Below are positions 1,278 to 31,008 of a DNA stretch of 64,000 nucleotides, piece by piece. The notes under the pieces are model-generated. The model ran no database searches. It was not told where the DNA came from and saw only the letters and a list, made by a program, of their open reading frames with translations. Origin of the DNA: Ruditapes philippinarum (taxonomy: Eukaryota); contig NW_026866343.1 in the NCBI RefSeq assembly GCF_026571515.1, positions 1-64,000 on the forward strand, in the 5' to 3' direction. Both the position numbers and the translations under genes were made by a program. Position 1 is the first letter of the stretch. Each line of letters opens with the position of its first letter.

Positions 1278-1537
1278 GATCAGAGGTTATGAAGCCTGCA
1301 TATAACAGATAGGCGGTCAAAAGACCAATTTAAAAAGCAGGCCACATATCCTAAGGGTGAATATACAGTATTCAAGTATGGAATACTGGAACCACCCAAG
1401 CAAAAAAAGAGAGCCAAATTCAAAGAATTTAAATACAATGTACCACACCAATGATGTCGTGTTGAACGATCTTTAAGGATCGGAAATATAACACCCCTGA
1501 TTGTATGTGCGGGGCGCGACTTTTTACGTCCTGTACA

Positions 1538-5491: not shown

Positions 5492-6478
5492 ATGCCGAGT
5501 TACAAAAGGATATTCTGTATTTTAATTTTAAATTTATTTCTCCTGACGGCCAATGCTTTGATCGAGCGGTTTAGATCAGTGGCACTTAGTGGACCGTTAC
5601 AGAATCTCCGTGTTTTCAATGACAAAATTTTCATTGGAGGCACCAATATGCTATACATTCTTAATAATGAGTTGAGTGTAAGTCAGTCAGCAAGAACATG
5701 CTTCAGTTCTTCGATTTTGTGCGGAAACATTAATAAAATCTTACTTGTGCTGGAAGAACGAAACGAAATTTTCGTATGCGGAACTGACAACGGATTGTGT
5801 GAAATACGAATGATTGATAAAATTGAAAATGTTGTTCGAACAAGTTCGAGTTCGGAATATCAATTGATTTTTGACACGAACTCAAGTGACCCTGTGCAAG
5901 GTATTGCAACAATGGATGGTCATGTTACGTTAGCCGTTTCTTTAGGTGTAACACAACCGGACGTTTACGATTGGTATTGGTACACTTATTTTATCAGTGT
6001 AATGGACGTTGTAAGCTTAAGGAACAAAAAATATATTGATGCTCCTACTATAAAAATTGCTTTTCCCGAATTCATCTCCTATTTCAAAGACGTGTTTCAA
6101 TTTAACTGGTACACCTATTTTGTAACAAACCAAAAGAAGAATCTTAACAGTACAAACTATGTTTCTAAATTGATTAGTATTTACCAAAATGATACTAAAT
6201 TTGATTCATATACAGACATAGTTCTTAGTTGTAGACATGATGGCATTGAGTATAATCTTATCCAAAAGGCAGTACTAATAGATGCCCCTAATTCCTTCGG
6301 ACTTTTGAGTAACGATAGTATTTTTGTGGGAGCGTTCACCAGAGGAAATGATCCTACCAATCCATCCGGGAACACAGCGATTTGTGTATCTAAAATAAGT
6401 GAAATGATTTTTGACATTTTGAATACTGAAGAGAACTTTGAGAGTTTGGCCAAAAAGGAAAGTTTCATCTGTGTTGAG
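5492..6478 (+). CDS. First coding exon of the plexin-like receptor: signal peptide and most of the Sema domain
   Basis: MPSYKRIFCILILNLFLLTANA signal peptide, 329 open codons, donor GAG|GTAATG. A large first Sema exon is typical of plexin and MET genes. Confidence 0.9.
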
Positions 6479-9400
6479 GTAATGACATTTTTTCATGATG
6501 TTCAAAGAGTATGATTATGAAATGTACTACAAGTAATCTGGGATGTATCAATAACCATTAAAGCTCAAATAAAAATGAATCAGAAAAAGTGGTTTTGACA
6601 ATGTTTAAAATGATATTAGTAATGGTGATGAGGAGGAAAAAAATAGTGATGATGTTGTTCGATTTTGTTGTAATTTTAATCACAATGTTTATGATAATGA
6701 TATTTATGAGTAGGAAGAGATGGACATTTTGTAGAAATGATAAGTAAAATGACGATGATTGGGTTTATCAAATTTTTATTTATATAAAGCTTAACCTATT
6801 TCGACCTGCACCAGTCAACATGCATTATGAAAACTATGGTAACGTATGTATTTCTTTTGCAGTTTGCAGGTTTATAAGAATGACGACAGCAACACTTTAA
6901 GACTTTAGTGCTTGTCAAGAATCTTATTATTAATGTTCTGATTATTTTTTAAACTTATACAAATTATATGTTGCATAAATGTTTATTATTTTTAATGCAT
7001 TTACCATGCATCCCATATGTAGAGGTAGAGGTAGAGGTAGTTTGTCCAAAGGTATTACTCATAGAGAAAGCATTGTGATGTTTTTAAAACCTCCACTCCA
7101 TATAATCAATCAATGACATTAATTCTTTAAATTTTCAGAATACATGTGTATATACATAATATGCAGTAAATTACACGAAATTATAATCAAACACAAATAT
7201 GATGAAATAACGTTATGTTTAAATTGCAAGTGTAATAAAACAATAATAATATCAATAAAAAGGAAGTAAAGTTCCGCCTATAGGGTATCCCATACATACA
7301 TGGTGATGAAGATCATGGCGTTTACGTTGTGGTTGTTTTTTGATGATGACGACGACGATGGTGTTGATGATGATTTAAGTAAAGTAGGTTCTGCTTCATT
7401 TTTTCCAGAAACTTTATTTTCCCTATTCGCCCAAGTTGCTTTGTGGGAGCGGAAATTATGCGCATAAAATGACAGCGACATATCTACATCAAACGAAGAC
7501 AGGTCACGTGACCGCGCTTGATGGTACTTCTATTGGCATAGATACTATCGTCCTTGTTGCCGGGCTATCGACTGGATCTTTAATACAGGTATTTCTTGTA
7601 TTATTTAGAGCTATGAAAAATAATTAAGTATTTAGAATAAATACTTGGTTTTCTTGTACACAGAAATCCCAGATATCTGGTACTGAAGTGTTCTCATGTT
7701 TCAGGAAGACCTCTCGGGCCAACGGTTAATGAGAAATTATATTTTGATTGAATTTAAAGATAATAGTTACTAGTACACAGAAATCTCAGATATCTGGTAC
7801 TAAGGATGCTATATATGTATAAAGCAAAAACAATGTTTTATGAATGTTTTGGAAATATAAGAGGTTGTTGGAATGAAAATGTTGGGGATAGGTTAAGCTT
7901 AATAATGATATTTGGTTGTGAATAGTTTTTGAGTAGATAAAATGTTTCTTTGAATTTATAGTTTTGAATGATTTTAGAAATAGATTAAGATTGGTATCAT
8001 GTATGGAATGATTTTTTTTGGTTATCTTCCAATCATAAGGATAAGTATCCCAAGAAAAATTATATGTATTTACGTTTGAGAATGTCAAGATTATTAAGAT
8101 TTTCTTTTGTAGCAATAGATTTAATAATCAACAGCTCGGTACACGATACAATATTACCATCATTTTATAACTCTAAACATCTTCCTTTCAGTTGTATTCT
8201 TATTACACTTACAGTCACTGCTTTCACAGAGTATATATGGTATGGAAAGAGAAAATAAATAAAAAAGATAAAGTTAAGGTTAAATTGATAAATGAAAGTG
8301 TGAAAAGACGAAAGTTAGCTGCATGAAAATCTTAAAAAATAAGACTAACCTTGAATATAAATAGTCTACGATTTAATAATCATTTTCCTAAGTTATTCAA
8401 AGAATTTTTAAGTTTATTCAATGCATCTAAAATGTATCTTATAATTAAGTGCACAGTATTTGAGTGAAAAGCTTCCAAGTATTATTTTACCAAAACCATC
8501 CAACATGAATACACAATCCAAATGACTTAAGTTTGACGTAACCGTCTATATGCCCTTTGAAATTGGGTATACGCACCGACGATGTACTTTCCGCAGATCT
8601 TCAACGCTCCAACGCTCTCATTATTTCCATGACATCGCCGCCACATTTTACAGTTACTTTTGGATTGTCGATTATTATATTATTATTATATTATAGATGT
8701 ATATTTGAAGTTTAAGCTTTTAGTATTCTATCCATCGGTCTCAGTGGCGTTATATTGACATGTTGTGTCAGTAAAATGCAACAATTTTATAAATCTTACT
8801 TTTCCTGCACGTATTCTACTGTGAACATTATTTATTTGTTTCATAGTTGTTGTTAGTAGATACCTCGGCAAAGTAGCTTATCAGTACCGGGCAGTATAAT
8901 ACGAAGGGCAAACAGAAAATAATCCAAGTTTTCATCTTAATATTTCAGTCGAGTTTATGAGTAAACATACATAAGTTTTAGATATTTTGGCGACACAACT
9001 CGAAACAGATGTGATGCCTACGAAACAAAACATTATTTATGTATTATATTTTGCAGATATCCATGAAAAGTGTGAAATCTCCCATGGAGCTGTTAAGTAC
9101 GACAGAAGTGAAAACACCAATACATAAATCTGGAAACAAAGTGATCCCTCGGAAGCATTAATCACAACAAAATAACATAAGAATTGCAGACTCGGTTTGA
9201 TTGAGTCTGTACATGAGGGATAATGAATAAGTGCAACATCCCTCACGCCCCCTAGCACCGGCTTGAGCGGTACTCAATTCTCAACACTTTATAGTGCTGG
9301 CATATCAATGATCCCGAAGGACCAGAAAATATAACAACACTGAAGTGAAGTACGGGGCAACTTTTTACGGCTGCCACACGGCACTTGACACCTGCTGTTG

Positions 9401-12400
9401 TGAAGTACAAAATTCTGGAAACAAAGTGATCCCTCGGAAGCATTAATCACAACAAAATAACATAAGAATTGCAGACTCGGTTTGATTGAGTCTGTACATG
9501 AGGGATAATGAATAAGTGCAACATCCCTCACGCCCCCTAGCACCGGCTTGAGCGGTACTCAATTCTCAACACTTTATAGTGCTGGCATCAATGATCCCGA
9601 AGGACCAGAAAATATAACAACACTGAAGTGAAGTACGGGGCAACTTTTTACGGCTGCCACACGGCACTTGACACCTGCTGTTGTGAAGTACAAAATTCTG
9701 GAAACAAAGTGATCCCTCGGAAGCATTAATCACAACAAAATAACATAAGAATTGCAGACTCGGTTTGATTGAGTCTGTACATGAGGGATAATGAATAAGT
9801 GCAACATCCCTCACGCCCCCTAGCACCGGCTTGAGCGGTACTCAATTCTCAACACTTTATAGTGCTGGCATCAATAAAGTTCATATACAGGATGAAGATA
9901 TCATTTATGTTTTGGGCTCTCAACATGTTAGATCAATATTTTATTTTTCTATATTCAGTTTAGATATGTCTTGTGGTGTTTTAATATCAATCAATAACTA
10001 ACGTTCGTAAGAAGTACTGTTTTCTTCTATGGAAGACCAATTATGGTATAAGTGCAATAGAAGCAAACGCTTTCATTAGCTTTCGACATTTGTTTTCTTC
10101 CGAAAAAAATGACTTAATTGTTTATAAAAGAAATGCTTATAACTTAACTTATAACAAAATATTATGCTTAACAACAGACGTTTGTTAAGCAACAAATGTG
10201 TATTCAATACCCAACTGCTATAAGGATTATTTTGGTCTTCACGACAAATAAAACTAACAGATCTAACATCGGTTTCACTATCGAATCCAACAATGTGCAT
10301 GGAGTTATTATCTTGTTTTCTTTGCGAAAATACCATATAATTTTATTTCTTAAAAGTAACTTTTAATTTTTATTTGGTTTCAACTGTTGTTGTTCTTATG
10401 GACAGGTGTATTCGTATTCACAGTCCGATTGCTCAGAGTTCAAGTCTGTTGCTGAAACAATGGCAGGCCGGAACCCACTATGTGGCTGGTGCGTTTTCAA
10501 ACAAAGGTAATTCATAGAAAAATAATGTCCTATTGCAAAGACAGGCACTAGACATAAAGTAATTATTTGGATAATTGAATTATAGGATCAATGATAATGA
10601 GATTCTTAAGACATACATTTTAAGGAGCCCCATTGTACCCTAGTAATGCATTTATTGTTTTATTTCTCAAAAGCTTTTTACTTTTGTTTTTTGTTATCCC
10701 GTTTTCAAGGAATTTTGCATTGGCCAGTAACCTAAACCATCTTTTGGTACTGTTAATGCAATTGAGTCTGTTATAAGGATTTAGTACTTTGTATGGTTGT
10801 TAACATTTTTTTTTTCATTTTGTGATTCAAATAAATTTAGTGTTATATTCTTTAAATGATGCGCAACTTCATGCTATAGACATAGAAATTAATATTTTTT
10901 CCTTTTTAAAGAAGAAAACACATCGTTTCTGAGGCATAATATTCTGACATCTAAAATGCTTCTTACAAGCTTTATTATCAAGTTTCCACATCGAACTGTA
11001 ATTGTAATTATAAATAAATGAATGCTTTTGTGTGGCGTAACCTTGTTTGCGCCGCTTGTAATTTATAACATTTACAAAACAAAATTGGTTTTTCACTAAT
11101 GTTCAATGATAAATTATCAAATTTTAACATTCTGGGGTATTTTTATGCTTTAACAAATAGTATGGGCGGCGGAGTCATGCTGATTTAACTGTCACAAATT
11201 ATTGCACAATATCATAAAACATGACATAATCATCTTATTTTATAGAGCAACATGGAAAACTAAATGCTCAGAAGCGCCCTTCCATTGGATATCGTCGTTA
11301 TATAAAATTCATATAACACCATCCAAAATACCTGTTAGTGTTTCAAAGATTACAAACGTGAAGGTAAATCTTATTTATTAATTTATTTATTTACTTATTT
11401 ATTTATTTTATTACATTATATAATATTATATTCATTCGTATTTCTTTTGTGTTCTTTATATTTTTTCTTTTTTCGTATAATGTGTGTGCGTGTGGTTTCG
11501 TTTTTTTTTACAATAACAGGAGGTTATTTGCCCTCTCTATGTTAAACAAAACCAGCTTCTTTTAATACCAAATAGAACCAAATGTAGAGTAGAATCAATA
11601 TATATTGGACATTAAACATGTTTGTGTTAAGTTCTTTTTATGTTATTTGGCTTATTATCTTTTGAATACTGCACTTCAGGTGACGATTACTTTGGAGCAC
11701 CATCCAACGCCGCAAACGGAGGACGGGGTTTTTAAATGCAGACTTGTGGATAATAAGAACGACATCATTGCCTCGGATATACAAGCAGAAAATAAAAATA
11801 ACGGAAGTGCGATTTCTTGTGCATTGCCTTTCGTTAAAGGTTTTGTTACATTTGTTACATGTTTATTATCAAAGATGTGTTTAACGTTGCTTGCTTTGTA
11901 CGCCATCTCATCGTTTGCCTGTTTCCTTTGGAAGAAAATTATTTCAATTTTTGCACGTGCTTAAATATTGAATACAATATAAATCAGTACAAGAAGGATT
12001 GTGTGGTGTTACACTGTAAAAACACAATCATGCAAACTGTCCTGACCCTTTACCTTAAGCTAATCAATTTATCACTTTGATATTGAAAATGAAATTCAAA
12101 AATATTTAAATCTGAAGCAGAAAGGAACAAATATATTATGTATTATGTATTTCTATCTATGCCAGTGTAAACTTCAAATTTTTTATCATCATCTATTGCG
12201 TATACATGTCTTAACTTCAGAACATGGAAAGTTAAAACTTGAGGTGTCAGTGCAGGCTTACGTAAATGAGAGTATCCTTATTGCAGAAGCGGTCATTTCA
12301 TTTTACGAGTGTGGTAACCTGACAAGGTACTTAATATTATTAAAAGTCACGTACAATACATGGTGTTGATACTTACATAGATATTTTTTTAACAACCAAC

Positions 12401-15400
12401 ATGTACGGATTATTTCAACATGAAAGTGATATTTTTATCGCTAGATGTTTGTTAATAAAAAAAAATACGTATTAGAATATGACTATTTGCATTCCTTTTA
12501 GGTCCTGCTTAATTTATAATTATCCGAACTGTTAAATTTCTAACTGAAATATATCTCAGTTGTACATTAGCGGAGTGGGAAAAAGATCGAGCATCGTTTG
12601 TAAGTTTTTAATATTCTTGACTTTAGGGCGCTGTGCAAAAATAGCTGACTGCAATGACGGTCTAGAAAGATATTTCATTATCAAAATAAAAACGTCAAAT
12701 CACATCGCCTCCGCACGAAAAAGGCATGACAAAACCGAAACCGAAAACATAACGAAACGCAGATAGTGTACTTTCCACTGAGGTATCTATTATTCATATT
12801 GCTATTGTTATAACATGTATTTATAATAATGTTACATATTTCGGTTGTTCATCATTCGATTTCGCTTCCGTCGAACGCCAATCTTCTTTGCTTTCATTAT
12901 TTAAAGATCAAAAAGGTTTCTATCTTAATCATCTTTTAATTGAAAGTTATTGAAGAATAACTTACTGTATTTCCTAAAAGGAAACTTTGTGGTGATATAT
13001 ACTTTCAGTTTTAATTAATATGAGAGTGTAGGTCATCAAGGACCAACATATATGAAACGCAGTCGTTTATTATTCATACTACAGAAATATAAAACAACAA
13101 GTGTGAAATAACTCCGGAAGATAAAACGACGAGTGGAGGCAGAGAGAACGAATAAATTACTCATTCCAAATAATGAAAAACTGGAAAATAAAGTTAAAAT
13201 ACGAAGACATACAAAATAGAAGGAGGGAAAGAAATAATTCTACATAAACAGGAAGAAATTAATGATAAAAAACGCGATACACACGACACGAACTAGCATA
13301 CACACGCCATATAAAAAGAAAATTAAACAAAACATGTATTTAATTATTATGCCATTTCGTGTCCCTCAGAAGTCGAAGACGAAGACATGAATACACGATA
13401 ATATGCTTCGACCTTTGAGAGCACCGTCAGGAAGACACGATATTTTTCACGCGAAATAACGGTATGTTTAATAGTAAGTTGACTACACGATATCTTTTTC
13501 AGCAGAGTTATCGTGTTGGCGGGTAGAAATCTTTGTATCGGCGCCTTATACTCAAATTTCAAAGGGCGAAGACACATTAATTGGCCAATTATCATGTCTT
13601 CGACTTTCGAGCGAAGACTTTCTTCAATTTTCAAATTTTCAAAAACTAAAATATATAATATAACTACAATGTACGTTTGATGAAGCGTAAATATTAATTC
13701 ACTGCAATAGAATGTTCAATATAGTGCTAAACTTATGAAGAATGAAGCACGTCATTTCTTGACAACATTGTCGCCATTTGGTAACGCGCTTAAACGATGG
13801 GTGTTGCCTTTAACAGTATATATATAAATATACATAAGCCGCATTTCTACTCTAACATATCAAAATAATTGATCATTGATTACTTTCTCTTATCGTTTTA
13901 AGTAATTTTTATTAATTTATATTGTCATTACAGTATTGAAAATCATTGTCTTGAAAAACAAATACGTATCACATAAATATTTATTGTTTCGATATTTTAT
14001 TCAATAGCTGTGTTGACTGTACAGAAAGATCAGACCCACAATGTTACTGGTGTAATGATGCAGCAATGTGTATGTCACCAAATTCTTTGTGTAAAAGTCA
14101 ATTGATAGATTCAGTAAGTTTTTATACATTGTTTATAATGAAACATAATTTGCAATGTGCTAGAAGATATTGGCATATCATGTAATACTTGTATGAAATA
14201 ATGATATGATGGAATCCAATAAGGTATAATGGCTTGCTGAGCTACGATAAGCTTATGCTGTAATGATGTACAATGATATATTGCAATTTCTAACACGCTT
14301 CACACTATTTCCCTATCAAACAGACAGGGAAATTAAATGCATTATCACACGATTTATGATCAGGCTAAAAAAGAAATGCTTACAGGTCATATAACGGCAT
14401 AATTATATGACGCCAATATTTCAAATGACGTCTGTGAAATAACTTTTTCACGCAATGTAGTTCAGCATTTCTTTTCAATTCTTTGTTTTATTAGCTTGTT
14501 AGAATAGAAATAGATATTAAGAGATTAATACACGACATAGTAGGACCGGAAGGTGATATTCGACCCGCAAAATGAATAATGGCCCCAAGGGCTTCAGCCC
14601 GAGGGCATTATTCATTTAAGGGCTGATTATCACCTTCAATGACCTTTATTAATTTTTTCACGTCTTTTAATGTTTTTAATACACTTGATATATCGAACAG
14701 AAGCAGTTCTGTAGATTTCAACTATACTGTAGGGTAAATCCCGATAAATATAGACATACATGTATTTTGAATGACGTTCGTTAGGAATAAAAGTTAAGCT
14801 ATCTGTTATTCGTCGATGTAACCATTTGTAAAATATATTCCTCGGTCATTATCGTTTTGAACCGACCAAAACGTTGATGTATTAATATGTTTATGCTTCA
14901 TATAAAAACTGGTAAATACGGTCAGGTGGCCCGTAAAATAGGGCCATATTAATTAATGATAAGGAACATACAGATACTCTTGTCGTTTTTTTTTTTTTTA
15001 CAAAAATAGGAAACAGAAAAAGAACACATCTGCATATATTCACAAGATATATGATTTCATTGACAATAGAAAATTTCATAGGGCATTACAAAATATGTGC
15101 AATTAAACATCATTTCTCTAATATTAACATCTAGATCTAGTTTAAATTTTCCAACTAATTTGTTCGTTAAGTACAAGTATTACTATAGGGAAAGTAATTC
15201 ATTTGTCTTTTAAACTTGAATATCAAATACACAAATATCGGATCAATCACTGGCTGATTCTTTCATAAACTTCAAGAGCCTGGTTGTACAGTAATATTAA
15301 AACCTCTTTGTCAGTTTATTTCTATAGATTTATCAGTTCTTAATTCATTCAGTATTAATCTGTTTACAAAATTCAGTTATTTTCCCTTTTTTTCAGAACA

Positions 15401-21400: not shown

Positions 21401-24400
21401 GTAAGGATGGACTATCGGTTAACTGCATTGTATTAAAAGAAATATTCAATACCCCCGAAAAATGGTTGGCATATAATGTTTTGCCCTTGGTGTTTCGGCT
21501 GTTCGTCTTTTGAGCAATTAAAGAAAATTTAAAGTACTTGGTAGAAATAACAACCATGATTAAAAAGAAAAAAAAAACATGTACAATTTTGGCAGAAGAA
21601 AAACACAAGTAAACCATACAAGTCTCATACATATATGCAGCTCTCCAAATTTTAAATTATATAGGAGAAACTTAATCTCGTCTCCTTTGTGTACATGTGG
21701 CGCTACTGACACTGACTCTCACTTTCTGCTTATTTGTCCTTAATTGGTATCACTCCATACGTCAGCAAAGTACGAACATAAAATCAGATTCTGCACTTGT
21801 CCATGCTTCATTGAAGCATTAAAGCGTTTCGATTCATAATTTCCGACATAGCATTTTTCAACTTCTTATTCCGGTGGCAAACTGTGTGACACAACTGTTT
21901 TATTATCATTACATTCATTTTTATACAGTTAAACTTTTGCACATTTCACTTATTTCACCAGTGTTATTTAAGACGGCAAATAACCAGTATTATCATAACA
22001 AACAAAACGGTTACAAAACACCTCTAATTTTATGTCTATTAACCTTAATTGCCTTTATTACGATCAAGGTGTTAAAAACATGTGTCGCCTACTGTCACAT
22101 TCAGAACATGTCAGCCCGCAACTTTTGTTGTCTTTTTGTGTTCGACCGAGAAGGTGTGATTTTCACTATATTTCTGCCGAAGGGACCAGAGATCAGGTTA
22201 GAGAGATGTTCCAGAGAAATTTTGCCGATACTGCGCGATGAGTTCGAGCGAAGGGATGTATTCGAGCGATCCGAGTTCGAGCGCAGGAAGTTTAACTGTA
22301 TTTGGCAGAAAATTTACCTCGAAGAATTGATGCCCATAGTGATGGTTTGAACTTTCTCAGGACAAAGTCACAATTTCCTGTTTAAACCGTCGAAAGGAAC
22401 TTTAAACTAACGACGGAAGTATAATTAGTAATAAGACGTCATCCAGAACACATGTTTGGGACTGCTGCTATATTAAATTGCTTCGCCAAGCGGATCACTT
22501 AGTTTACATAGACTTATATAGTCAAACACATTTATTCTAATTCTATGCAATTATTTAAAATGAGCTAAGCTATTTGGCATGTCTTGAGGACTACTACCAA
22601 AATGGATAAAAACATTCTCCTCGGATCAATATTGTCCCACCCCACGGGCCACTTATCTTATAAAGACTTATATAGAAAATATATTTTAAATCTTAAATGT
22701 CCAGAGCCAAATTGACAACTAATCTTAGATAATTGGCATGTTTCACCACCTGGCATACCTTTCTATTAAGTGACAAAAATCGTTAGCCTGGTGTTAAAAT
22801 TAGCTCTGACTGGGAACTGAATCTTAAACTACAGCAATTTATGTAGAAAATTTCTCTTAAAAGTCTATCTAAGTTTTCCTTTATAAAATATCACGTTTAT
22901 TTTGGAAACGACTTTGCTTTCTGGTGCATATTGCCCTACATTCGCGGTGCTCTGGTTTGAACTTAGAAATAAGGGTTTTTCGAGTCGATTTGAAATATAA
23001 TATTACAATTTTCCTTAATTGCATTTTTATTCCAAAAGACAAAATCTTAAACATATAATTTGCCTTCATAATGACTTTTCTTTCCGTTGTAAATGTTCAT
23101 ATCCGATATTTCTGAGAAAACATGCATAAAAAAGATATTGTTTCGATTGGGAAGTTTACCAAAGTATATACATGTACATGTATTATAAAACGTGACTGTA
23201 TATGAAGTATATTTAGAAATCTTACAATTTTAGTGACGGTTTACAATTGTACAATGTTGGCCACAGATTGTACGCAATGTAAAGCACTTAACAAAACACG
23301 ATTTCTTTGTGACTGGTGCACCAACACCAACAGATGTGGCTATAAAGATCAAAATTGTTCATCGGTAAAATGTCCGGCTCCTTCTATAACAGACGTAAGT
23401 GTCTAGACATTTTAAAAAACAAATCGGTACGTTATCGTTTAGTATATTACTTGCTGTTATTACAGTGTTATTTTAGTTAGTTGGATATTTATTCGGGGGT
23501 GAAAGAACATCATCTGGATTTGTTATGAATGTTTTGTTGTTGTTTTTGAATTAATATTGAAAAATTAAATATTTATATATAATCTAAATTGTATATTTAG
23601 AAATGGACCAATTTTATTTTGCCGTCCGTATTTATCAAAAAGAGCATTATATAGTTTCATCTTGAAAAATCTACCATTTCAAATAATTCCAGAATGTGTA
23701 TCTAGTTTACAGATATTTAAGCCATGACCGACTTATTAGTTAAGATGTAGTATTTAGTTATGATTGATAGTTATTAACTATTTTACAAAATGCACTAATA
23801 TTATCAAAGGTCATTCCAATGGACGGTCCTGTAGATGGAGGAACAATAGTTACTATTTACGGATTAAATCTGGGCTCAAGCCTGTTGGATATCAACAGCG
23901 TCGAAATTGCAAACATTCCTTGCAAAATAAACTACGATATGTCGCAAACAAATGACACACCCAACGGAATTTTTGAATCAAAAATTCCAAATCGGTAAGA
24001 TAACTATTATATGACTCTCTTATTATATTGGACCAGGTCTGTGCATTTCTGATTACCCCACTTGTCCTCTTTAAGCTTAATCAGTTTTAAACTTGACAAA
24101 AATGATAAAAAATATACTTTACTCAAATTATTTCACTTAAGATAAGATTGATATAAAATGCTGTTGATATTTTACACTCTTTTTCAAGGATAATATGTTT
24201 GACTGGATCTTCCAAGAACGAGACATCAGGACCTGTCATACTGTCAGTAAATAGTCGAATGTCTAGCTCTACTGTCACATTCTACTATCGAGTATGTATA
24301 TATGTGATATTTTTCCATATTAATATAGCTTAAAATACCCTTGCTCTCATTTATCAAACTTTCCCTGTCAATATACTGTTATATCTCAAAGCCGTAACAT

Positions 24401-27400
24401 CTGGTTAACATCTCTTTAATTCAAAGGTCAGCTTGTTTAAAATGAAAGATAGAGATTCGCCTTTAAACTAACTGTTTATGACATTGATACCTTTTGAAAG
24501 ATTTTGTTGTGTAGTATGGTGTAGTGGATATCTCTGGATGTCTAAAATGAGTTGCCCCACTTGTATTATACTTTCTACTTTTACATTCACTCGGGGGAAC
24601 TGCTTGGGTCTATTGGGACCTCGTACTTGTTTATTTTAATTGATGAATAACATTATTATTACTTTAAATTGGAAATGACTGACTATAAACTGTATACGTT
24701 GTACACGAGTCAATACGCTACGCATTTCCCGCTTAATTTTGTACATGTTACTTTGACCAGTGATGTAGAATTTTATTATGAAAAATGTGGTCATTTAATG
24801 GACGGGGGGATATCTGATAAGTATAGCAAAAACATCTGCGAACGTGTTAAAAATCAGATCTGGACTAGTTTGAGTTTCAAGTTCGCTATAACTTTTGTTT
24901 ACATGATAGTTTTGTTTGAAGCATGTACCAGATAAAGCGGGGGGAAACTGGATTGTCTGTTTTCATATATATATTTCATTAGCAGTCATTTACATGTATA
25001 ACAATAAAGAAAATAGATAAAACATAACTTTTTCGAGTAAGGATTGTTATTAAAAGAATACCTTTGCAAACTGATATAACGTAATCAAGTTATTTTATAC
25101 ACTTTTTATGAAATGTCACTCCGTAGGTTCCAATTGTGACGGACATTTTACCACATTACGGACCGGAAGCAGGTGGGACCCACTTAACTATATTCGGCAA
25201 GAATCTAGGAATTGGAAATAGAAATGTAAATGTAAAACTTGGCAATTTCCCATGCTTAAGACCTGAAGTGAGGCCAGAAGTTCCATTAGAAAATATGTAA
25301 GTTAAATGTTTTAGAACATTAAAGCAGGAAATAATTTTTTTTCTCATGTATCAAACGATTTTAAGATACAGAAAAAGAAATGCAATTATTCGTCAATCCA
25401 TTTGGTAATTTTACAAATAGTCTACTTACTCATAGTGTAAGCCATACCTTTCCAGGTGCTATTCTTTCTGTCAAAAATATAGATTGCTGTCTTTGACATA
25501 CTACTCTGTCGTTTGAGACAAATCGCGATTTTGACATTCCCTTGTTTTCTAAGGTACGGCGAGCACTAAAGTTTCTTTGCACTCATTTATCGCACAAGCT
25601 ACAATATTCTTTTCGCTTGGCCACAAAATGTAAATTCATTAACCATACACCACGCCAGAAAACACCAATCATTTTATCGCGCACTAAAGGTTCAATGTAT
25701 TTAATAAACCTGCCATAAAAACATCAAGCAACACAAAAGGCACTAAAAGGTCTAGTGTATTTAATAAACCCCGCCTAAAGACATTAATCAAGTCATCGCA
25801 TCATGAAAGGGATACTGTATTTACAACGCACTATTATACATTTGTCAATACATCAAACTCTTTCTTCACACTGCAAAGTCAGCATTTACTGTTTATATAT
25901 GTCTTGTTATTTTTTTCAGGGCATCAATAAACTCTACAATTGTTTGCACGGTTGGTAAAAGGGGAAATAACACAGCGAGCAAGAAAACAGTTTATGTCGG
26001 AATGGATCGCCGCATTCTTATTATACCCGATTCATTTACATATGTCCACGATCCGACTCTACAGCCTTCAGTTCCCAAAAAAGCATTTCTAAGGTATGTT
26101 TAGCTTCTAAGTACACAAAACTTAATATTATAATGTTGGATATATGCAACTTAATTTGTCAATCGCAAAGAGATGGAAAGCGCTTATCTTCTGAAAAGTT
26201 AATCATTTGCAGCTCAGATTAGAGTGTTTTATTGTACAAATTCAAATTGATTTGTCTTTAACTGCTTTACTGAATATGCTGCAACTATAACAATCTTTTT
26301 ATTGCTTTTTAGAATGAATTAGTATCATTTAGTTTTAATATAAAACATCTTGTTTTTTATTGTTTAGATTTTCTTTGGTAATTTAACATTTTGATGACTA
26401 ACATTTTCGGTTATGACTGTAGTCCTAATCAAATTCAGATTGAAGATAATTAGTATAACTAGATTGCGTTAAATGTCACTGTTTGGTCTTTCTTAGTGGA
26501 GGAACTAAAATTACAATTGAAGGAACACATTTAGACAACGCCAATAGTGCAAGATTAACAATAAGTTTCATGCAAGACATTGAGGTAATTTTATTTACTA
26601 TTTTACACTAGACTTATTGAAATTAACTTTAATTAGTATTTTAATTCTTTGCCCAAGTTGGTTAATGCAAAAAGTAGCCTCTTGATGCTCATATCACACA
26701 GCCCGACGGAAAATGTAGCTGATGTTATATTTGTACTTATGTATACCTTGAATCATATTGTGGGTGTGTGGTTTACCGAGTCTGCAATTTTCATATCATT
26801 TTGTTGTGATTAATAGTTCCCTTTTCCTTAATCGCCCTTTTTCTAGATTTTTATAATTTACAACAGCAGGTGTCAAGTACCGTGTGGCAAGTGTAAAGAT
26901 TTGTCACTTTTTTGCTCCTTCGGAATCATTGATTCCATCACTGAAAAAGTTGAAAATCGAGTAATTGCTCAAGTCGTTCTGGGCATGAGGGATGTTGTAC
27001 TTTCTCATTATCCCTCATGAACAGACCCAATCAAACCGAGTCTGCAATATTCATGTTATTTTGTTGTGATAAATGCAAAAAGAATCACCCTTTTCACTAT
27101 AATCAAAGAAATTCAATACAAAATTTCATTTCTTTTTCAAATTTTAAACTTACTTAGGACTGCTGTTTATTTATTCGCCTCAACTGCTAATGATGAAACC
27201 AATCCTGTGAGGCGTTTAACATCATAATGGTACAGTTCTTTACGTGCAAAATCCACGACAAAATCGTCATTTTGAATAGGCTAACAGTTTTTTGAAATAT
27301 GTAAACAAAAAGGTTAAACTATTCAGAATTTATAGTCTGTTGTTTCAATAAATCATAATCATTCATGTTCCTTTTTGTTTATTTTTAAAATTTTTTTTTT

Positions 27401-30400
27401 GGCATTTGTGAATTTGTAACTGTTAGATAATAATTATTTAGTTTTGCATAAAGTTTTAAACATTGTCAGTTATACATCAAATACCTTTATACTCAACATG
27501 CTGTTTATATTACAGACTGGCGACTGCATTATACTGTCAGAAAATTTGGCATCATGTGAAACTCCAAAAGCGCCAAAAACTCTTGAAGAAGAATTATTTA
27601 AATTCGAAAATTCAACTGATCGTTTTTTAAAACATGTTACAGTAGTGTGTTCTATTTTTCTGGATAACGTTGAAGGCAATATTGAAATAAAATACTATCA
27701 AGATCCAATTATCAATCAGCTAGCTGAAAGTGACCATGTCGTAAAGTTTGAAGCCGATGAAAGGCTTCTGAATATTACTGTACGTTTTGATCAATAAATA
27801 AATATCACTATCATCTTTCAGCGTTCGATTTAAAAAAAAAAATTTGTTCAATTTTCATACGTTTGAAGATAAATCAAATTCAGAGAAAATTGATATAAAT
27901 GCTTTGAATATATATGTTTAAATAGATTTTATCTTAATGTCTTTCTCACAGTTGCCTTAATTGAAATCTAATTTTCATTGAATCATTGCTGTTATTATTA
28001 TGTTAATTAAATTGTACATTCCCTGAACATTATTGCAAGAATTATGTTTGGTCATATATTGCCGCTAATATAGCTACATTATAGCTTTTAATTGTGAGTT
28101 TAAAAGGCAGGCTTTCCATTCCTTTTGCATTTCAGGGTAATATGCTGAACCTTGTTGCGACAAAATGTGATATAATTGTAACAGTCGGCGTAGAATTATG
28201 TGTTGTAGTGGAGCTAAATCTAACGTGTATAACATGCATTGCTCCTATAATCGAACCAAGGAGTAGAATACCAAATGCAACACGACCGGAGGTTAATGTA
28301 AGGAAAATTCTTTACCTGATAACGTTTTGGCTTTTTAAATTATAAATCAAACAATCAATTACCGGGAGCTGTTTTAATTTAATTTCTGAAATTAAAAAAA
28401 ATATTTAAATAAACTTGTCAGTGTTTAAATTATTTGTAAGTGCGTATGTAGCTTTATATTCTTGACAGTTCATCGTGTAAAACTGTTGTATTCATTTCCC
28501 GTGTATCACTGACTGTGTAGAGCTTGACATACTGAATTAAATATCTAACGTGATGAGAATATATATCTGTGTAAGTCCCGAACGTATTAGCTGGAAAAAA
28601 ACTGAATTTTGTTCTGTATATTGTCAGTTCAATAGGAGTGTACACTGAAATATGAGAAACAGCCACATCCTTTTATAGTTGAGCATATAAACGCAGTAAA
28701 AACGCCACTACTACAAATGTGACAGTGCTAACGTAATAGAAAACGAAAATCGTGTGCCTATAAAACTACCGACACGTTTACCTTCTTGTCTCCTGGTGCT
28801 CTGTGATGCTTTATGTAACCATAACGTATTTGCTACTATAAACTTGGCACGCTTGTAAAAAAAATATGTGCGTAACCGTTTACTTCTAGGTAACAATAGG
28901 AAACATACACAAGATGATTGGATATGTTGAGTATATAAAAAAGTCGCCGGACACGATCAGAAACTATTCAAGTACTCCTATTACTTCCGTTGTACTGTCG
29001 GCGACTGGAGCGGGTGCTGCGCTCATTTTTATCAGTGCAACAGGTAAAATTATCGCATATACGTGTACATAATTTCCTTCTTCGTTGATTTTTTTGTGTA
29101 TATGTAAATTGAATTTAGCTATGTTTTGAAATCCATCGAGATTTTTACGAAATAGTAAAAAAAAACACGGAATCCCTAAAGGATGCCCAAAACGGCAAAT
29201 TTGAAAAGGCTGCAGACCCGGTATGATTGAGCCGAGCATTAACGTCATTTATGTGTAACTGTTTATTTACTGTCGCCACTTGGAAAAATGTTAGTCAAAA
29301 TACTCCCGTGAACAAAATGTTTTTAATTACACGTACATTTCTTTTCTTATTTAGCACATGTTTATTTCATGTTTGCAATCGATTACTGTAAGATATACTT
29401 AAACCGATGTGTTCGCTGCTTATTTCAGAGAATACATAAACGATTTTAAATCAATTTTGCATTCTATAAAGTGAGATGCATTAACGATTTAGAGTAAATA
29501 TTCAATGGAATACAAACAATTTCTAGGTAGTTTGGCACTCTCTTCATAATCTTTATAACGGCGGGAAAAGACAGTGGGTTGTTGGTTATGCAGCATTTGT
29601 ACGGGCGTTAAAGATTTCAGGTAAACGAAAGGATTGCATTATAGGCAATACCGAAAGAAAGTCATATATAATGTCACGTTATTCTGTCAAATTATCTCAA
29701 TAAATTACATATATTTCATTTTTACAGCTGTAGTTTTGATATGTCGACAATACAGAAAAACAAAGTCAAAATTAAGAAATATTGTAAAACAGAACAGTAC
29801 GAAAGAAGAAATTCCTTGTGAGTTACGTTTGAGCAGGTACATTAATTCAATACAATTCAATATTTTCAGTTTATGTTTTTGTTAAGGCTGTAATGGATTT
29901 TATAACTCCGCATCATCTTGTTATTTATAATTGATACAATTATGAAACTACGTGTGTTGCATTAAAAGTGGTTATGAATTCTTCAGGGAGTAAATTAAGT
30001 AGTGAAGTTCATATTTGGTATCCTTTAATTAGTGTCTGTTTTTCCCTCTACCAAAGTACGATTAATCCAAATTAATCCGTATCGTAGTTTTATATTTCTA
30101 GATATAAACTCTAAATTGAATACCAAAGTGATAAAGTCACTCTGCATTATTGTCAGTTATTGTGTATTTGTCGTTATTGATTACCGGTTAGGCCGCCGGT
30201 GGGGGGGGGATGGGCAGCATGAGAGATGTCGTATATTACATTGCCTCATGAGCATACTCAACTAAACTTTTGTTTAGGTACATTCCTCCAAAAGTATAAA
30301 AAATATCCAATTTACATGTAAACTTGGAGTACTTGTTTAGTATCAACTTTACAATGCATTTCGGTGTGTGTGTGTGTTGGGGGGGGGGGGAGTGGTAGTT

Positions 30401-31008
30401 CATCCTGAAAGCCATTTTTGTTAAGTTATTTCTCTTTTTATACTTAGTATACTAGCTTATATTTAAAATTGATTGTCCGCTTTTACACTCCGAAACCTAG
30501 AACTTAACTATCAAGATCATTGTCTTTTATATCTTATTAGCAAAACAGATTTTAGGGGAAAAGCAATACACCAAAGCATGTGAACATTCAAATAACATGG
30601 TCCTGGTATTCAAAGTTATACTGTTCTCTATTTGTGTCCATTTCACCGCTATTTATATCCTTATACATGTAATTTTATCTTGTTTATAACAGAATTGCGG
30701 GTTCGTCGTGTGAGATGAACTACTCCGAGGTCTACAATGACCAATATGAATCTGACCACTATGACACTATCGCATCAGACAACATTCAAATGGATAGATG
30801 CGAAACTAATGATAATTCTCTAAATTGTCCGCGCGAGAGCGTTTTGGAGGCAAGAACTTCAACCAGTGAACAATCCCAAACGACTAACCATATTACTGTA
30901 GAAGTTCAGCTAGAAGAGGCAATAGCAACGAATGTTAAATCCGAACCCGAACTAGCTGGCGATCAGTTGTATTTACATGTTATTAACATTAGTGACCTTT
31001 CGGACTAG
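5492..31008 (+). CDS. Plexin/MET-like single-pass receptor (Sema-PSI-IPT ectodomain, TM, short Tyr-motif tail, no GAP or kinase domain); exon 3 disrupted in this haplotype
   Basis: Exons: 5492-6478, 7409-7588, 9057-9128+9879-9926, 10406-10506, 11246-11363, 11680-11839, 12221-12326, 14008-14113, 18723-18821, 21080-21185, 23234-23394, 23810-23994, 24189-24291, 25127-25296, 25920-26093, 26497-26584, 27516-27779, 28136-28297, 28890-29043, 29728-29836, 30693-31008. All junctions are GT-AG and phase-compatible, totalling 3969 nt (1322 aa plus stop). Sema motifs: IFIGGTNMLYIL, NINKILLV, VCGT..GLCEIR, FDSYTDIVLSC, YNLIQKA, TAICV. PSI motifs: NPLCGWCV, SCVDC..DPQCYWC, YNC..LATDCTQC..CDWC. IPT motifs: P..GPVDGGTIVTIYGLNLG, GPEAGGTHLTIFGKNLG, SGGTKITIEGTHL. 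Confidence 0.85.
9129..9873 (-). mobile_element. 2.6 tandem copies (285+283+177 bp) of the structured repeat, inserted in coding exon 3 with a 5-bp TSD ATAAA
   Basis: Units start at 9129, 9414 and 9697 and differ only by a 2-bp indel as far as I can see. ATAAA lies at 9124-9128 and 9874-9878. Removing the insert and one TSD copy restores ...TEVKTPIHK-VHIQDEDIIYVLGSQH. Confidence 0.9.
13345..13625. repeat. Degenerate TE-like segment with a recurring (C)GAAGACA(C)GA motif in both orientations
   Basis: cgaagacgaagacatga, ggaagacacga, gcgaagacac, tgtcttcg and gcgaagact. No termini identified. Confidence 0.35.
14727..17805 (-). mobile_element. pogo/Tigger/Fot1-like DNA transposon with a decayed transposase
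   Basis: TIRs CTGTAGGG(T/A)AAATCCCG..., each flanked by TA (14725-26 and 17806-07). On the minus strand: HTH-psq MRYDQASLENALRAVEAGMFVQNAAKLFNVPGSTI (~16968-16865), DDE_1 motif ENIVLLSLLP.CTNFLQPLDRTFFRLLK, and NAFRVCGIVPLNR. Confidence 0.9.
16133..16537. repeat. ~202-bp tandem duplication inside the pogo transposase
   Basis: Two near-identical copies beginning GAACATTTTCCTAGCAAAAAAG. Confidence 0.9.
19468..19590 (+). mobile_element. Degenerate tRNA-derived SINE head (same family as 36975-37200)
   Basis: GTGGCAGAGCGGTTAAGGTCGTTGACTTCAAACCACTTGCC...GATTCGAGC, with an A box and a decayed B box. Confidence 0.75.
19744..19768. repeat. (TG)n microsatellite
   Basis: Read directly from the sequence. 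Confidence 0.95.
20240..20360 (-). repeat. Diverged relative of the structured repeat
   Basis: Collinear shared motifs ATCCCT, CAGACTCGGTTTGATTG, AAGTGCAA and CCCCAGCACTGGCTT. Confidence 0.7.
20693..20870. repeat. ~88-bp tandem duplication
   Basis: Two copies of TCTTCTGCATTATAAATG.AAGCTTTCTC...AACGAACTTCCAAAGAATTCCACAAGTTATAGCTTAATC. Confidence 0.9.
21926..22298. mobile_element. Internally deleted Tc1/mariner-pogo-type MITE
   Basis: TA-CAGTTAAACTT ... AAGTTTAACTG-TA termini, with three subterminal TTCGAGCG repeats at the right end only. Confidence 0.7.
22480..22870. repeat. Old degenerate ~155-165-bp tandem repeat, HINE-core-like
   Basis: Recurring AGACTTATATAG and TTGGCATG motifs at roughly one-unit spacing. 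Confidence 0.4.
26775..27076 (+). repeat. Diverged, oppositely oriented ~1.15-unit permuted copy of the structured repeat
   Basis: Starts and ends with ACCGAGTCTGCAAT...TTTTGTTGTGAT (period 260 bp). It includes the ACAACAGCAGGTGTCAAGT spacer and retains CCTTCGG. Confidence 0.85.
30693..31008 (+). CDS. Last exon of the plexin-like receptor: Tyr-motif cytoplasmic tail
   Basis: IAGSSCEMNYSEVYNDQYESDHYDTI...DQLYLHVINISDLSD*. The frame and stop position are conserved in the paralog at 56457-56769. Confidence 0.85.

What the first reader, a model, noticed from the sequence alone, without database searches (positions are those of the whole stretch)
5492..31008. Plexin ectodomain joined to a short Tyr-motif tail instead of a GAP or kinase domain
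Established: plexins carry a ~600-aa split Ras-GAP/RBD cytoplasmic region, and MET/RON carry a tyrosine kinase. Seen: this gene has a plexin-type ectodomain (Sema, 3 PSI, several IPT) but ends ~140 aa after the TM. The tail has YSEV-x9-YDTI (ITAM-like spacing) and a C-terminal QLYLHV. The same stop position and these motifs are kept in the paralog while the spacer diverges, which argues against a truncation artefact. Inference: a lineage-specific family of SH2-recruiting semaphorin-fold receptors, plausibly immune or self/non-self receptors or decoy co-receptors.
Basis: partly seen in the sequence, partly recalled or inferred. Interest (0 to 1): 0.8.

Follow-up and report, generated by a model that had tools for sequence, protein, structure and literature searches.

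The report
Short-tailed plexin-like receptors in clam
The Manila clam has a tandem family of genes that keep the whole outer part of a plexin (a cell-guidance and immune receptor) but replace its inner enzyme domain with a short tail carrying a few conserved tyrosines. The genes are real and at least one is transcribed, but the tail's job is untested and the copy in this window is cut by a recent mobile-element insertion.

Summary
Window 5492-31008 (+) holds a 22-exon gene of Ruditapes philippinarum. It encodes a signal peptide, a Sema domain, three PSI and six IPT domains in the plexin order, one membrane span and a 135-aa tail that ends at TAG 31006-31008.

No RasGAP or kinase coding sequence lies in 271 kb around five family genes. 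True GAP plexins sit on other contigs.

RNA contigs confirm the splices E17>E18>E19>E20>E21. The last two exons, E22 and E23, have no read support. They rest on conserved splice sites, a shared stop, in-frame indels and Ka/Ks of about 0.4-0.6.

At least 12 copies exist in the genome. The motifs YDTI/YNTI and YLHVI/YLHAI are invariant. The ITAM-like pairing is not: the spacer is 4, 9 or 12 residues, and the first motif is lost in two copies.

Caveats:
- Gene A carries a 750-bp insertion with a stop in exon 3.
- Paralog B runs into garbled assembly.
- Paralog C has a stop in exon 1.
- Paralogs D and E look intact.

Short-tailed plexins are already reported in a sponge, so this is a new variant of a known kind. 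Recruitment of SH2 proteins and an immune role remain inference.

The scan had noted the exon-3 insertion and the paralog on this same window before.

The parts
5492..6478 (+). E1: signal peptide plus the first ~5 blades of the Sema propeller. The donor is at 6478, or at 6508 as in the RefSeq model of paralog C.
   Evidence: phmmer to plexins and MET; PDB Plexin-A 1.2e-13; AlphaFold model pLDDT 88.7, Foldseek TM 0.72-0.74 to Plexin-A2 Sema; Ka/Ks 0.35-0.73
7436..7588 (+). E2: Sema blade (an alternative acceptor lies at 7409)
   Evidence: Phase-consistent sites. RefSeq model XP_060591006.1 of paralog C starts this exon at the 7436-type acceptor. 73-92% aa identity in B-E.
9057..9926 (+). E3: end of the Sema domain. 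Its coding parts are 9057-9123 and 9874-9926.
   Evidence: The exon is contiguous in paralogs C, D and E.
9124..9873 (.). 750-bp insertion inside coding exon 3: 2.7 tandem copies of a 283-bp unit, 99% alike, flanked by a short ATAAA-type duplication. It brings an in-frame stop.
   Evidence: Alignment to paralog C; Tandem Repeats Finder; translation
10406..10506 (+). E5: PSI1
   Evidence: Cysteine pattern CSEF..CGWC; tblastn to the PSI of P0137; phases
11246..11363 (+). E6: end of PSI1 and start of IPT1
   Evidence: 76-90% identity in B-E; third-position periodicity of substitutions; phases
11680..11839 (+). E7: IPT1, first part (the choice of donor is inferred)
   Evidence: Periodicity; phases; conserved in B-E
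12221..12326 (+). E8: IPT1, second part
   Evidence: Phases; conserved in B-E
14008..14113 (+). E9: PSI2
   Evidence: Pfam PSI 4.9e-5; own PSI2-IPT2-PSI3 profile 4e-5
18723..18821 (+). E10: IPT2, first part
   Evidence: Own plexin IPT2 profile, E 0.026, positions 61-96; phases 0/0; 82-91% identity in B-E
20624..20719 (+). E11: IPT2, middle (inferred)
   Evidence: Phases 0/0; conserved collinearly in B-E
21080..21185 (+). E12: IPT2, end (donor at 21143 or 21185, both phase 1; inferred)
   Evidence: Phases; conserved in B-E
23234..23394 (+). E13: PSI3
   Evidence: Pfam PSI_Plexin-B 6.6e-5 and PSI 7.8e-4; own profile 3e-9; strong periodicity
23810..23994 (+). E14: IPT3, first part
   Evidence: Pfam TIG 7.8e-8
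24189..24291 (+). E15: IPT3, second part
   Evidence: Pfam TIG 0.027, profile positions 47-84; phases
25127..25296 (+). E16: IPT4, first part
   Evidence: Pfam TIG 2.9e-9
25920..26093 (+). E17: IPT4, second part
   Evidence: Phases. An RNA contig carries the end of this exon joined to E18 (loose end at 26489).
26497..26584 (+). E18: IPT5, first part
   Evidence: Pfam TIG 0.0027; RNA joint 26584>27516, GT..AG
27516..27779 (+). E19: IPT5, second part
   Evidence: RNA joints on both sides; contig 98.9% identical
28136..28297 (+). E20: IPT6
   Evidence: Pfam TIG 0.0037; RNA joints 27779>28136 and 28297>28890
28890..29043 (+). E21: stalk and first half of the membrane span
   Evidence: RNA joint into 28890; sequence; splice sites conserved in A-E
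29728..29836 (+). E22: second half of the membrane span plus a basic juxtamembrane stretch (RQYRKTKSKLR)
   Evidence: Phases 1+2 and 2+1 fit E21 and E23. Splice sites are conserved in A-E and indels are in whole codons. No read support.
30693..31008 (+). E23: 104-aa tail exon with YSEV (30727-30738), YDTI (30766-30777) and YLHV (30970-30981); stop TAG at 31006-31008
   Evidence: Acceptor AG and stop are conserved in nine close copies. Ka/Ks has a mean of 0.6, and 0.4-0.47 against subfamily J/K. No Pfam hit. No read support.
56460..59804 (-). Paralog B, exons E19-E23 (tail exon 56460-56768 plus stop). Its 5' part continues beyond the window, to C14830:89847.
   Evidence: E15-E18 were not found; they would fall in the garbled stretch 60000-64450.

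Best explanation
Shown: this is one member of a tandemly duplicated family in the Manila clam, with at least 12 loci on C14830, C4744 and other contigs. Its members are plexin-derived single-pass membrane proteins.
- They keep the complete plexin ectodomain: a Sema propeller, then PSI-IPT three times, then three more IPT domains.
- They lack the plexin RasGAP/RBD region and any kinase.
- Instead, two short exons complete the membrane span and encode a ~135-aa low-complexity tail.
- The family turns over by birth and death. D and E are intact. A has a fresh insertion, C a stop, H a frameshift.
- Gene A is transcribed and spliced at least as far as the membrane-span exon.

Inferred: the ectodomain binds a semaphorin-like or other protein ligand through the Sema domain, as plexins do. 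The signal is passed on through the invariant tail tyrosines (EVY, YDTI/YNTI, YLHVI/YLHAI). Once phosphorylated by a Src-type kinase, these would dock SH2 proteins such as Syk/Shark, SHP2/Csw or Src. The receptor would then carry, in one chain, the kind of output that vertebrate Plexin-A1 obtains through TREM2-DAP12. The nearest catalytic relative in the genome is a ~130-kb GAP-bearing plexin on C11739, so the short tail most likely replaced a GAP domain.
For: Architecture.

No GAP or kinase:
- tblastn with plexin cytoplasmic and MET kinase domains finds nothing at E<=1 in C14830:1-91000 plus C4744:90500-270342 or in the window.
- Plexin_cytopl exons occur only on C1764, C5038, C8068, C2048 and C11739.
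- None of 103 kinase matches lies on a family contig.

The tail is real coding sequence:
- Acceptor, donor and stop are conserved in A-E and in four more copies, and indels are in whole codons.
- Ka/Ks is 0.3-0.97, mean 0.6. Against the distant J/K copies Ks is about 1 and Ka/Ks is 0.4-0.47, with the three tyrosines still invariant.
- E22 is needed to finish the membrane helix begun in E21.

Transcription: GT..AG joints E17>E18>E19>E20>E21 in run X1, on contigs 98-99% identical to gene A. The RefSeq fragment model of paralog C confirms E1>E2>E3.

Origin: tree, and collinear Sema, IPT and GAP hits on C11739.

Downstream machinery in bivalves: ITAM-Syk signalling is reported in oyster (PMC6994640, abstract only). 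Plexin-A1-TREM2-DAP12 is described in PMC5328970.
Against: - No read joins E21 to E22 or E22 to E23. Depth over E22 and E23 is 0 in X1 and about 1 in X23. A tail-less isoform that ends in the intron after E21 (stop at 29070) cannot be excluded.
- No phosphorylation or binding data exist.
- The motifs fit no strict ITAM or ITIM across the family. They all also fit YxxPhi sorting signals, except YLHA in J/K.
- The tail is the fastest-evolving part (Ka/Ks up to 0.97 for pairs with A).
- Gene A as assembled has an in-frame stop in exon 3. Several other copies are broken.
- The ligand is unknown. Exon 1 is only 25-33% identical to canonical plexins.
Confidence: 0.5

Rival explanations
1. Non-signalling decoy or co-receptor. 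The family soaks up semaphorin-type ligands, or pairs in cis with canonical plexins through the ring-shaped ectodomain. The tail tyrosines are YxxPhi sorting or endocytosis signals that control surface level, not SH2 docking sites.
For: YSEV, YDTI and YLHV all fit YxxPhi. No strict ITAM or ITIM is conserved. The tail is acidic and Ser-rich and evolves fast. Sponge plexins with short, domain-less intracellular parts show that tail loss recurs (PMC6374515).
Against: In the distant J/K copies the last motif is YLHA, which is a poor YxxPhi, yet its tyrosine and the +4 Ile stay invariant. J/K/M carry a pattern that fits [DE]xxYxxL-x12-YxxI. A mere decoy needs no 135-aa tail kept at Ka/Ks 0.4 across Ks of about 1.
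Confidence: 0.25
2. A decaying family. Recent duplicates of a once-functional gene are drifting to pseudogenes, and the conserved tail only reflects their youth.
For: A has an insertion with a stop. C has a TAG in exon 1. Two further exon-1 copies have single stops. H has a tail frameshift. Introns are still alignable, at 10-15% divergence. Tail Ka/Ks for pairs with A is 0.53-0.97.
Against: All 22 exons are open in D and E. Ectodomain Ka/Ks is 0.2-0.7. Parts of exon 1 have 80-90% of substitutions at third positions. The tail keeps Ka/Ks 0.4-0.47 against a subfamily at Ks of about 1. Spliced RNA exists.
Confidence: 0.12
3. Gene-model artefact. The true transcript skips E22 or E23 and continues into a catalytic domain elsewhere, or the short tail belongs to another gene.
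For: No reads cover E22 or E23.
Against: No GAP or kinase coding sequence lies within 271 kb that hold five copies. The next gene downstream is an unrelated TPR gene. E22 completes the membrane helix with matching phases in all copies.
Confidence: 0.03

Closest known systems
Class A plexins (Drosophila PlexA, vertebrate Plexin-A1 to A4)
   Same: Sema propeller, with the best sequence and fold matches. [quoted passage not shown] Single membrane span.
   Different: No RasGAP or Rho-GTPase-binding cytoplasmic region; a 135-aa tyrosine-bearing tail instead. Only 25-33% identity in the Sema domain. Tandem multi-copy family rather than one or two conserved genes.
[quoted passage not shown]
   Same: Plexin ectodomain joined to a short, domain-less intracellular part. 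This shows that the GAP domain has been lost before.
   Different: A different phylum, and presumably an independent loss. No tyrosine motifs are described there. Homology of the tails was not tested, as the sequences were not on hand.
Met-LP receptor tyrosine kinases of Lophotrochozoa and echinoderms (PMC6374515); example P0082
   Same: A complete plexin ectodomain whose GAP domain has been exchanged for another output module. Found in molluscs.
   Different: Met-LP carries a tyrosine kinase; this family has none. In the exon-1 tree the family is not next to P0082 or the Met clade.
Plexin-A1-TREM2-DAP12 complex of vertebrate myeloid cells (Takegahara 2006, as cited in PMC5328970)
   Same: A plexin ectodomain coupled to tyrosine-motif (ITAM) signalling.
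   Different: There the motif sits on a separate adaptor chain and the plexin keeps its GAP domain. Here the motifs would be in the same chain, and their function is untested.
Other tandem clusters of tyrosine-tail receptors noted by this scan in the same clam genome (WSC/lectin, Ig, CUB and EGF heads)
   Same: Single-pass receptors in tandem arrays, with short tails that carry conserved tyrosines.
   Different: A different ectodomain. The tail sequence is family-specific: the own-genome search with the tail found only this family.

Membership tests
Plexin | N-terminal Sema domain (seven-bladed beta-propeller) | tested here: met
   phmmer to GAP plexins; PDB Plexin-A 1.2e-13; model pLDDT 88.7, TM 0.72-0.74 to Plexin-A2 Sema. 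Only exon 1 (about five blades) was folded. E2 and E3 were not joined to it.
Plexin | [quoted passage not shown] | tested here: met
   Two PSI exons and five TIG exons by Pfam. PSI1 by cysteine pattern and tblastn. IPT2 by own profile, E 0.026, plus phases. IPT1 and part of IPT2 are inferred from position, phase and conservation.
Plexin | Cytoplasmic split RasGAP domain with Rho-GTPase-binding insert (Plexin_cytopl, Plexin_RBD) | tested here: not met
   No tblastn hit at E<=1 in 271 kb. PF08337 hits fall on other contigs only. The tail has no Pfam hit.
MET/RON and Met-LP receptor tyrosine kinases | Cytoplasmic tyrosine kinase domain | tested here: not met
   No hit in the window or cluster. 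None of 103 own-genome kinase matches lies on a family contig.
MET/RON | Truncated ectodomain (Sema, one PSI, four IPT) | tested here: not met
   Three PSI and six IPT blocks. Exon 1 matches Plexin-A better than MET.
ITAM-bearing receptors | [DE]xxYxx[LI]-x(6-12)-Yxx[LI], conserved | tested here: inconclusive
   A/C/G/H: YSEV or YSGV, then 9 residues, then YDTI (V at +3). B/D/I: spacer of 4. E/F: first motif absent. J/K/M: EVGYSDL, then 12 residues, then YNTI, which fits. The pattern is not a family-wide feature.
ITIM-bearing receptors | [SIVL]xYxx[IVL] | tested here: not met
   Position -2 is M, D or Q at the three motifs of the close copies, and A or Q in J/K.
SH2-recruiting phosphotyrosine receptors (functional class) | Tail tyrosines are phosphorylated and bind SH2 domains | not testable with these tools
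   Only the conservation of three tyrosines is shown.

The most novel reading that the evidence does not exclude
A bivalve immune-type receptor family in which a full plexin ectodomain is wired in one chain to an activating, ITAM- or hemITAM-like phosphotyrosine tail. This would be an independent, single-chain counterpart of the vertebrate Plexin-A1-TREM2-DAP12 module. The family would evolve by birth and death, be expressed in haemocytes, and correspond to the 'several plexins' in the chromosome-16 Perkinsus-resistance QTL of the Manila clam (PMC13504780) and to the tandem 'plexin-A2-like' genes enriched in oyster granulocytes (PMC13070813).
Probability: 0.15. Interest if true: 0.8.

Novelty: new variant of a known kind. 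Interest (0 to 1): 0.5.

Why it matters
Plexins are textbook receptors whose output is a RasGAP domain. The only described exchanges of that module are the kinase in Met and Met-LP and the short tails in a sponge.

A multi-copy mollusc family that keeps the whole ten-domain ectodomain but carries a short tyrosine tail shows that the module was exchanged again. It would also offer a natural test of what a plexin ectodomain can do without GAP activity.

If the tail is a phosphotyrosine docking site in haemocytes, the family joins the growing list of clam-specific tyrosine-tail receptor arrays. It would then be a candidate for pathogen or self/non-self sensing in a farmed species that suffers from Perkinsus.

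If the tail is only a sorting signal, the family is a set of natural decoy plexins.

Tried and rejected
- Pfam on exon 1, E2 and the tail gave no hit. For exon 1 this is explained by the reach of the Pfam Sema model.
Three raw RNA runs of the species hardly cover the gene.
- The word search with the tail found only three ORFs of this species' own DNA in JGI data. With exon 1 it found one RefSeq fragment, which named the organism.
- Full-length RefSeq models could not be reached.
The tails of the 40%-identical C5034 subfamily therefore remain unknown.
- Aligning homopolymer-compressed sequence did not recover exons E15-E18 of paralog B from the garbled stretch.
- The substitution periodicity scan separates exons from introns only in part, because the introns of the paralogs are still about 88% alike.
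- The supplements of the clam QTL paper are not held.
- A direct splice from PSI2 to PSI3, without an IPT2, was rejected on phase.
Full report
Organism and setting. The window is G000:C14830:1-64000 of a 1.41-Gb assembly with 32% G+C. A word search with exon 1 returned XP_060591006.1, 'uncharacterized protein LOC132745989 [Ruditapes philippinarum]'. It sits on a contig of 270,342 bases, the exact length of contig C4744 of this genome. Earlier notes of the scan also call the genome Manila clam. No N runs occur in the window.

Exon 1 gives no Pfam Sema hit. The 182-position Pfam model lies in the C-terminal part of the domain: it matches residues 312-468 of plexin P0031. In this gene that part is spread over the end of E1, E2 and E3. 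Other evidence places exon 1 in the Sema domain:
- A full HMMER scan of 1.8 billion representatives gave 323 hits. They include bona fide plexins with Plexin_cytopl and Plexin_RBD (P0031, P0034, P0042 and others), MET-type kinases (P0103-P0105, P0145) and one Met-LP, P0082, which has a full plexin ectodomain plus a kinase.
- Against solved structures the best matches are the Plexin-A Sema domains: Drosophila PlexA 6fkm at 1.2e-13 and Plexin-A4 and A2 at about 2e-11. They come ahead of MET at 7e-6.
- An AlphaFold model of exon 1, built on 42 homologues, has pLDDT 88.7. It superposes on Plexin-A2 Sema at TM 0.72-0.74 and on MET at 0.65-0.68.

Pfam finds PSI in 13955-14182 and 23206-23403. It finds TIG in 23771-23995, 24157-24330, 25127-25297, 26459-26608 and 28085-28342.

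Gene model. I did not build or submit a joined protein; lengths were summed from coordinates only.

A chain of 22 exons is consistent in phase throughout, using reasonable GT/AG sites. Their coordinates are listed under 'parts'.
- PSI2 (donor 14113, phase 0) cannot splice directly to PSI3 (acceptors in phase 1 or 2). An IPT2 must therefore lie between them.
- A profile built from the PSI2-IPT2-PSI3 region of 13 plexins finds the start of IPT2 at 18714-18821 (E 0.026).
- Two further small exons (20624-20719 and 21080-21143/21185) close the phase. They are conserved and collinear in all paralogs.
[quoted passage not shown] This is the full plexin ectodomain described in PMC6374515, not the truncated MET type.
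- Without the exon-3 insertion the exons sum to 4,023 bases, or 1,340 codons.

The end of the gene. E21 (28890-29043) ends one base into a codon, within ...VVLSATGAGAALIFISAT. E22 (29728-29836) continues with AVVLIC, then RQYRKTKSKLR..., so the membrane helix is split over two exons. E23 (30693-31008) adds 104 residues and the stop. The tail is 135 residues long.

No hidden catalytic domain.
- tblastn with a plexin cytoplasmic region and two MET kinase domains finds nothing at E<=1 in C14830:1-91000 plus C4744:90500-270342. These 271 kb hold five family genes.
- Pfam Plexin_cytopl matches the clam genome only on C1764, C5038, C8068, C2048 and C11739.
- None of 103 matches to a Met-LP kinase domain lies on a contig that carries a family member. 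Only 145 of 316 candidates were scored there, so this count is a lower bound.
- Downstream of the stop, the next recognisable gene is an unrelated TPR gene at 37240-39979.

Transcription. No run is on record as an RNA holder. Run X1 has only 205 million letters yet holds 38% of the sampled words of the stretch 26400-32000. Its contigs skip 26584>27516, 27779>28136 and 28297>28890, each bounded by GT..AG.
- One contig carries the last 22 bases of E17 in front of E18. The aligner placed this loose end at 26489, because TTTCTAAG of E17 resembles TTTCTTAG just before the acceptor at 26497.
- These contigs differ from the window at 1-2% of positions. They therefore come from this gene and not from a paralog, since paralogs differ by 10% or more.
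- So E17 to E21 are transcribed and spliced as modelled.
- E22 and E23 have depth 0 in X1 and about 1 in the raw RNA run X23, and no joint was reported there. X1 also holds intronic contigs, for example 29069-29578.
- A tail-less isoform that reads into the intron after E21 (stop at 29070) therefore cannot be excluded.
- Read laying allows one call, so this could not be pursued.
- The RefSeq fragment XP_060591006.1 maps to paralog C. It shows E1 joined to E2 (the 7436-type acceptor) and E2 to E3.

Why the tail is nevertheless credible.
- The own-genome search finds 12 tail exons and 17 exon-1 matches.
- In nine close copies the acceptor AG and the reading frame are kept. Eight of them end at the same TAG. 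The ninth, H, has a frameshift.
- In A-E the E21 acceptor and donor, the E22 acceptor and donor, the E23 acceptor and the stop are all conserved. Length differences are whole codons.
- Ka/Ks of the tail exon averages 0.6 among close copies (range 0.30-1.25).
- Against the distant copies J and K, where Ks is about 1, Ka/Ks is 0.38-0.47.
- Positions invariant across both subfamilies include the Tyr of EVY/DLY, Y[DN]TI followed by ADD, NNS..CP, the block IT.E.QLE, and DDQ.YLH.I near the end.

What is not conserved is the ITAM-like pair.
- The first motif is YSEV or YSGV (Val at +3) in seven copies and YSDL in J/K/M. It is missing in E and F.
- The spacer to YDTI is 9 residues (A, C, G, H), 4 residues (B, D, I) or 12 residues (J, K, M).
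- Only J/K/M fit [DE]xxYxx[LI]-x(6-12)-Yxx[LI].
- No motif has the -2 residue of an ITIM.
- All motifs except YLHA in J/K also fit YxxPhi sorting signals.

State of the copies.
- Gene A carries, inside coding exon 3, 2.7 tandem copies of a 283-bp unit at 9124-9873. The copies are 99% alike and flanked by an ATAAA-type duplication. The exon is contiguous in C, D and E. Reading through the insertion gives a stop after ten codons. The assembled allele is therefore probably null unless the insert is spliced out.
- This confirms the scan's earlier notes s1-804363 and s1-803944 on this window.
- Paralog B lacks recognisable E15-E18. They would lie in 60000-64450, where 61% of bases sit in homopolymer runs of three or more, against 25% elsewhere. 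This is a garbled piece of assembly, so B cannot be judged.
- C has a TAG in exon 1.
- D (C4744:140925-180101) and E (C4744:191203-249805) have all 22 exons open.

Selection. Ka/Ks by domain for pairs with A is 0.38-0.64 for Sema, 0.21-0.71 for the PSI and IPT blocks, 0.30-0.64 for the membrane span and juxtamembrane part, and 0.53-0.97 for the tail. In parts of exon 1, 80-90% of substitutions fall on third codon positions. This is moderate purifying selection in a young family that turns over by birth and death. It is neither neutral decay nor overall positive selection. Site-level tests were not done.

Relatives and origin.
- In a quick maximum-likelihood tree of the exon-1 region, the five close copies form one group with 100% SH-aLRT support.
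- Joining them in turn are an ENA ORF (P0001, 55% identity), further single-exon ORFs from public assemblies, the three C5034 copies (40% identity) and the C11739 copy.
- The whole 30-row clade also contains two long-branch GAP plexins (P0034, P0055). It is separate from the clade that holds Met, the Met-LP P0082 and plexin P0031.
- On C11739 an exon-1-like block (309.8 kb), IPT3 (376.7 kb), IPT5 (405.3 kb) and two Plexin_cytopl exons (427.1 and 439.8 kb) lie collinear on the plus strand. This is a ~130-kb GAP-bearing plexin that branches near the family.
- The short tail therefore most likely replaced a GAP domain in a plexin, not a kinase in a Met-LP.
- The C5034 subfamily has no GAP, kinase or tail hit on its contig. 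Its 3' ends could not be fetched.

Comparison with what is known.
[quoted passage not shown] It also describes Met-LP kinases with a complete plexin ectodomain in annelids and molluscs. In the mollusc Aplysia it found only two plexins, a Met and a Met-LP. Loss or exchange of the plexin output module is thus a known theme.
- I found no description of a mollusc multi-copy family with a conserved tyrosine tail. NCBI calls the one model I could reach 'uncharacterized'.
- Two papers give leads that I could not tie to this family. One is the 'several plexins (A1, A2, B2, B3)' in the chromosome-16 Perkinsus olseni resistance QTL of this very species (PMC13504780). The other is runs of neighbouring 'plexin-A2-like' and 'plexin-A3-like' LOC genes enriched in oyster granulocytes (PMC13070813).
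- In vertebrates, Plexin-A1 signals through ITAMs by joining TREM2-DAP12 (PMC5328970).
- The scan's notes list several other tandem arrays of tyrosine-tail receptors with other heads in this genome. I did not test those notes.

Verdict.
- The family fails the defining cytoplasmic feature of plexins and of MET-type kinases. It should be called plexin-like or plexin-derived, not a plexin.
- How it works is open. I put 0.5 on ligand binding by the Sema head with output through phosphorylated tail tyrosines, 0.25 on a decoy or co-receptor whose tyrosines are sorting signals, 0.12 on a family in decay and 0.03 on a model artefact.
- I rate it a new variant of a known kind, of moderate interest.

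Noticed in passing
window 9124-9873: A very recent insertion of 2.7 head-to-tail copies of a 283-bp unit, 99% alike, sits inside coding exon 3 with a short ATAAA-type target duplication. Related copies lie in introns, for example at 26847-27070.
   Followed up: partly
window 26961-27147: This intronic repeat has by far the highest RNA depth of the stretch: 1350 in X1 and about 50 per strand in X23. The reads lie only partly on it. It is an abundantly transcribed dispersed repeat, apparently of the same family as the exon-3 insert.
   Followed up: no
window 60000-64000 (continues to C14830:64450): In this stretch 61% of bases lie in homopolymer runs of three or more, against 25% elsewhere. It looks like an uncorrected long-read patch in the assembly. 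It covers the place where exons E15-E18 of paralog B should be.
   Followed up: partly
window 37240-39979 (+): A small multi-exon TPR-repeat gene (Pfam TPR_11, TPR_2 and TPR_1 on the first exon) lies between the two convergent receptor genes.
   Followed up: partly
G000:C11739:309766-439916 (+): Collinear exon-1-like, IPT3, IPT5 and Plexin_cytopl matches mark a ~130-kb GAP-bearing plexin. It is the nearest catalytic relative of the short-tailed family.
   Followed up: partly
G000:C5034:104781-157994: Three compact genes (about 15-20 kb each) form a second subfamily, 40% identical in exon 1. No GAP, kinase or family tail matched on this contig. Their 3' ends could not be fetched.
   Followed up: partly
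G000:C4744:91798-105252 (paralog C; loci L028-L029): RefSeq protein XP_060591006.1 (340 aa, 'uncharacterized') is a fragment model of paralog C. It starts at an internal Met after the in-frame TAG of exon 1 and ends by reading into the intron after E3.
   Followed up: yes
window 1501-1863 (+) and 2791-3174 (-): Open frames that look like transposase remnants lie upstream of the gene. The only Pfam match is a weak DDE_Tnp_IS1595 hit on the second.
   Followed up: no
P0031 and P0082 (public proteins): A GAP plexin and a Met-LP kinase from public data share 73% identity over the PSI2-IPT2-PSI3 region. They are sisters in the exon-1 tree. This points to a recent exchange of the cytoplasmic module on one ectodomain in some other organism.
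   Followed up: no
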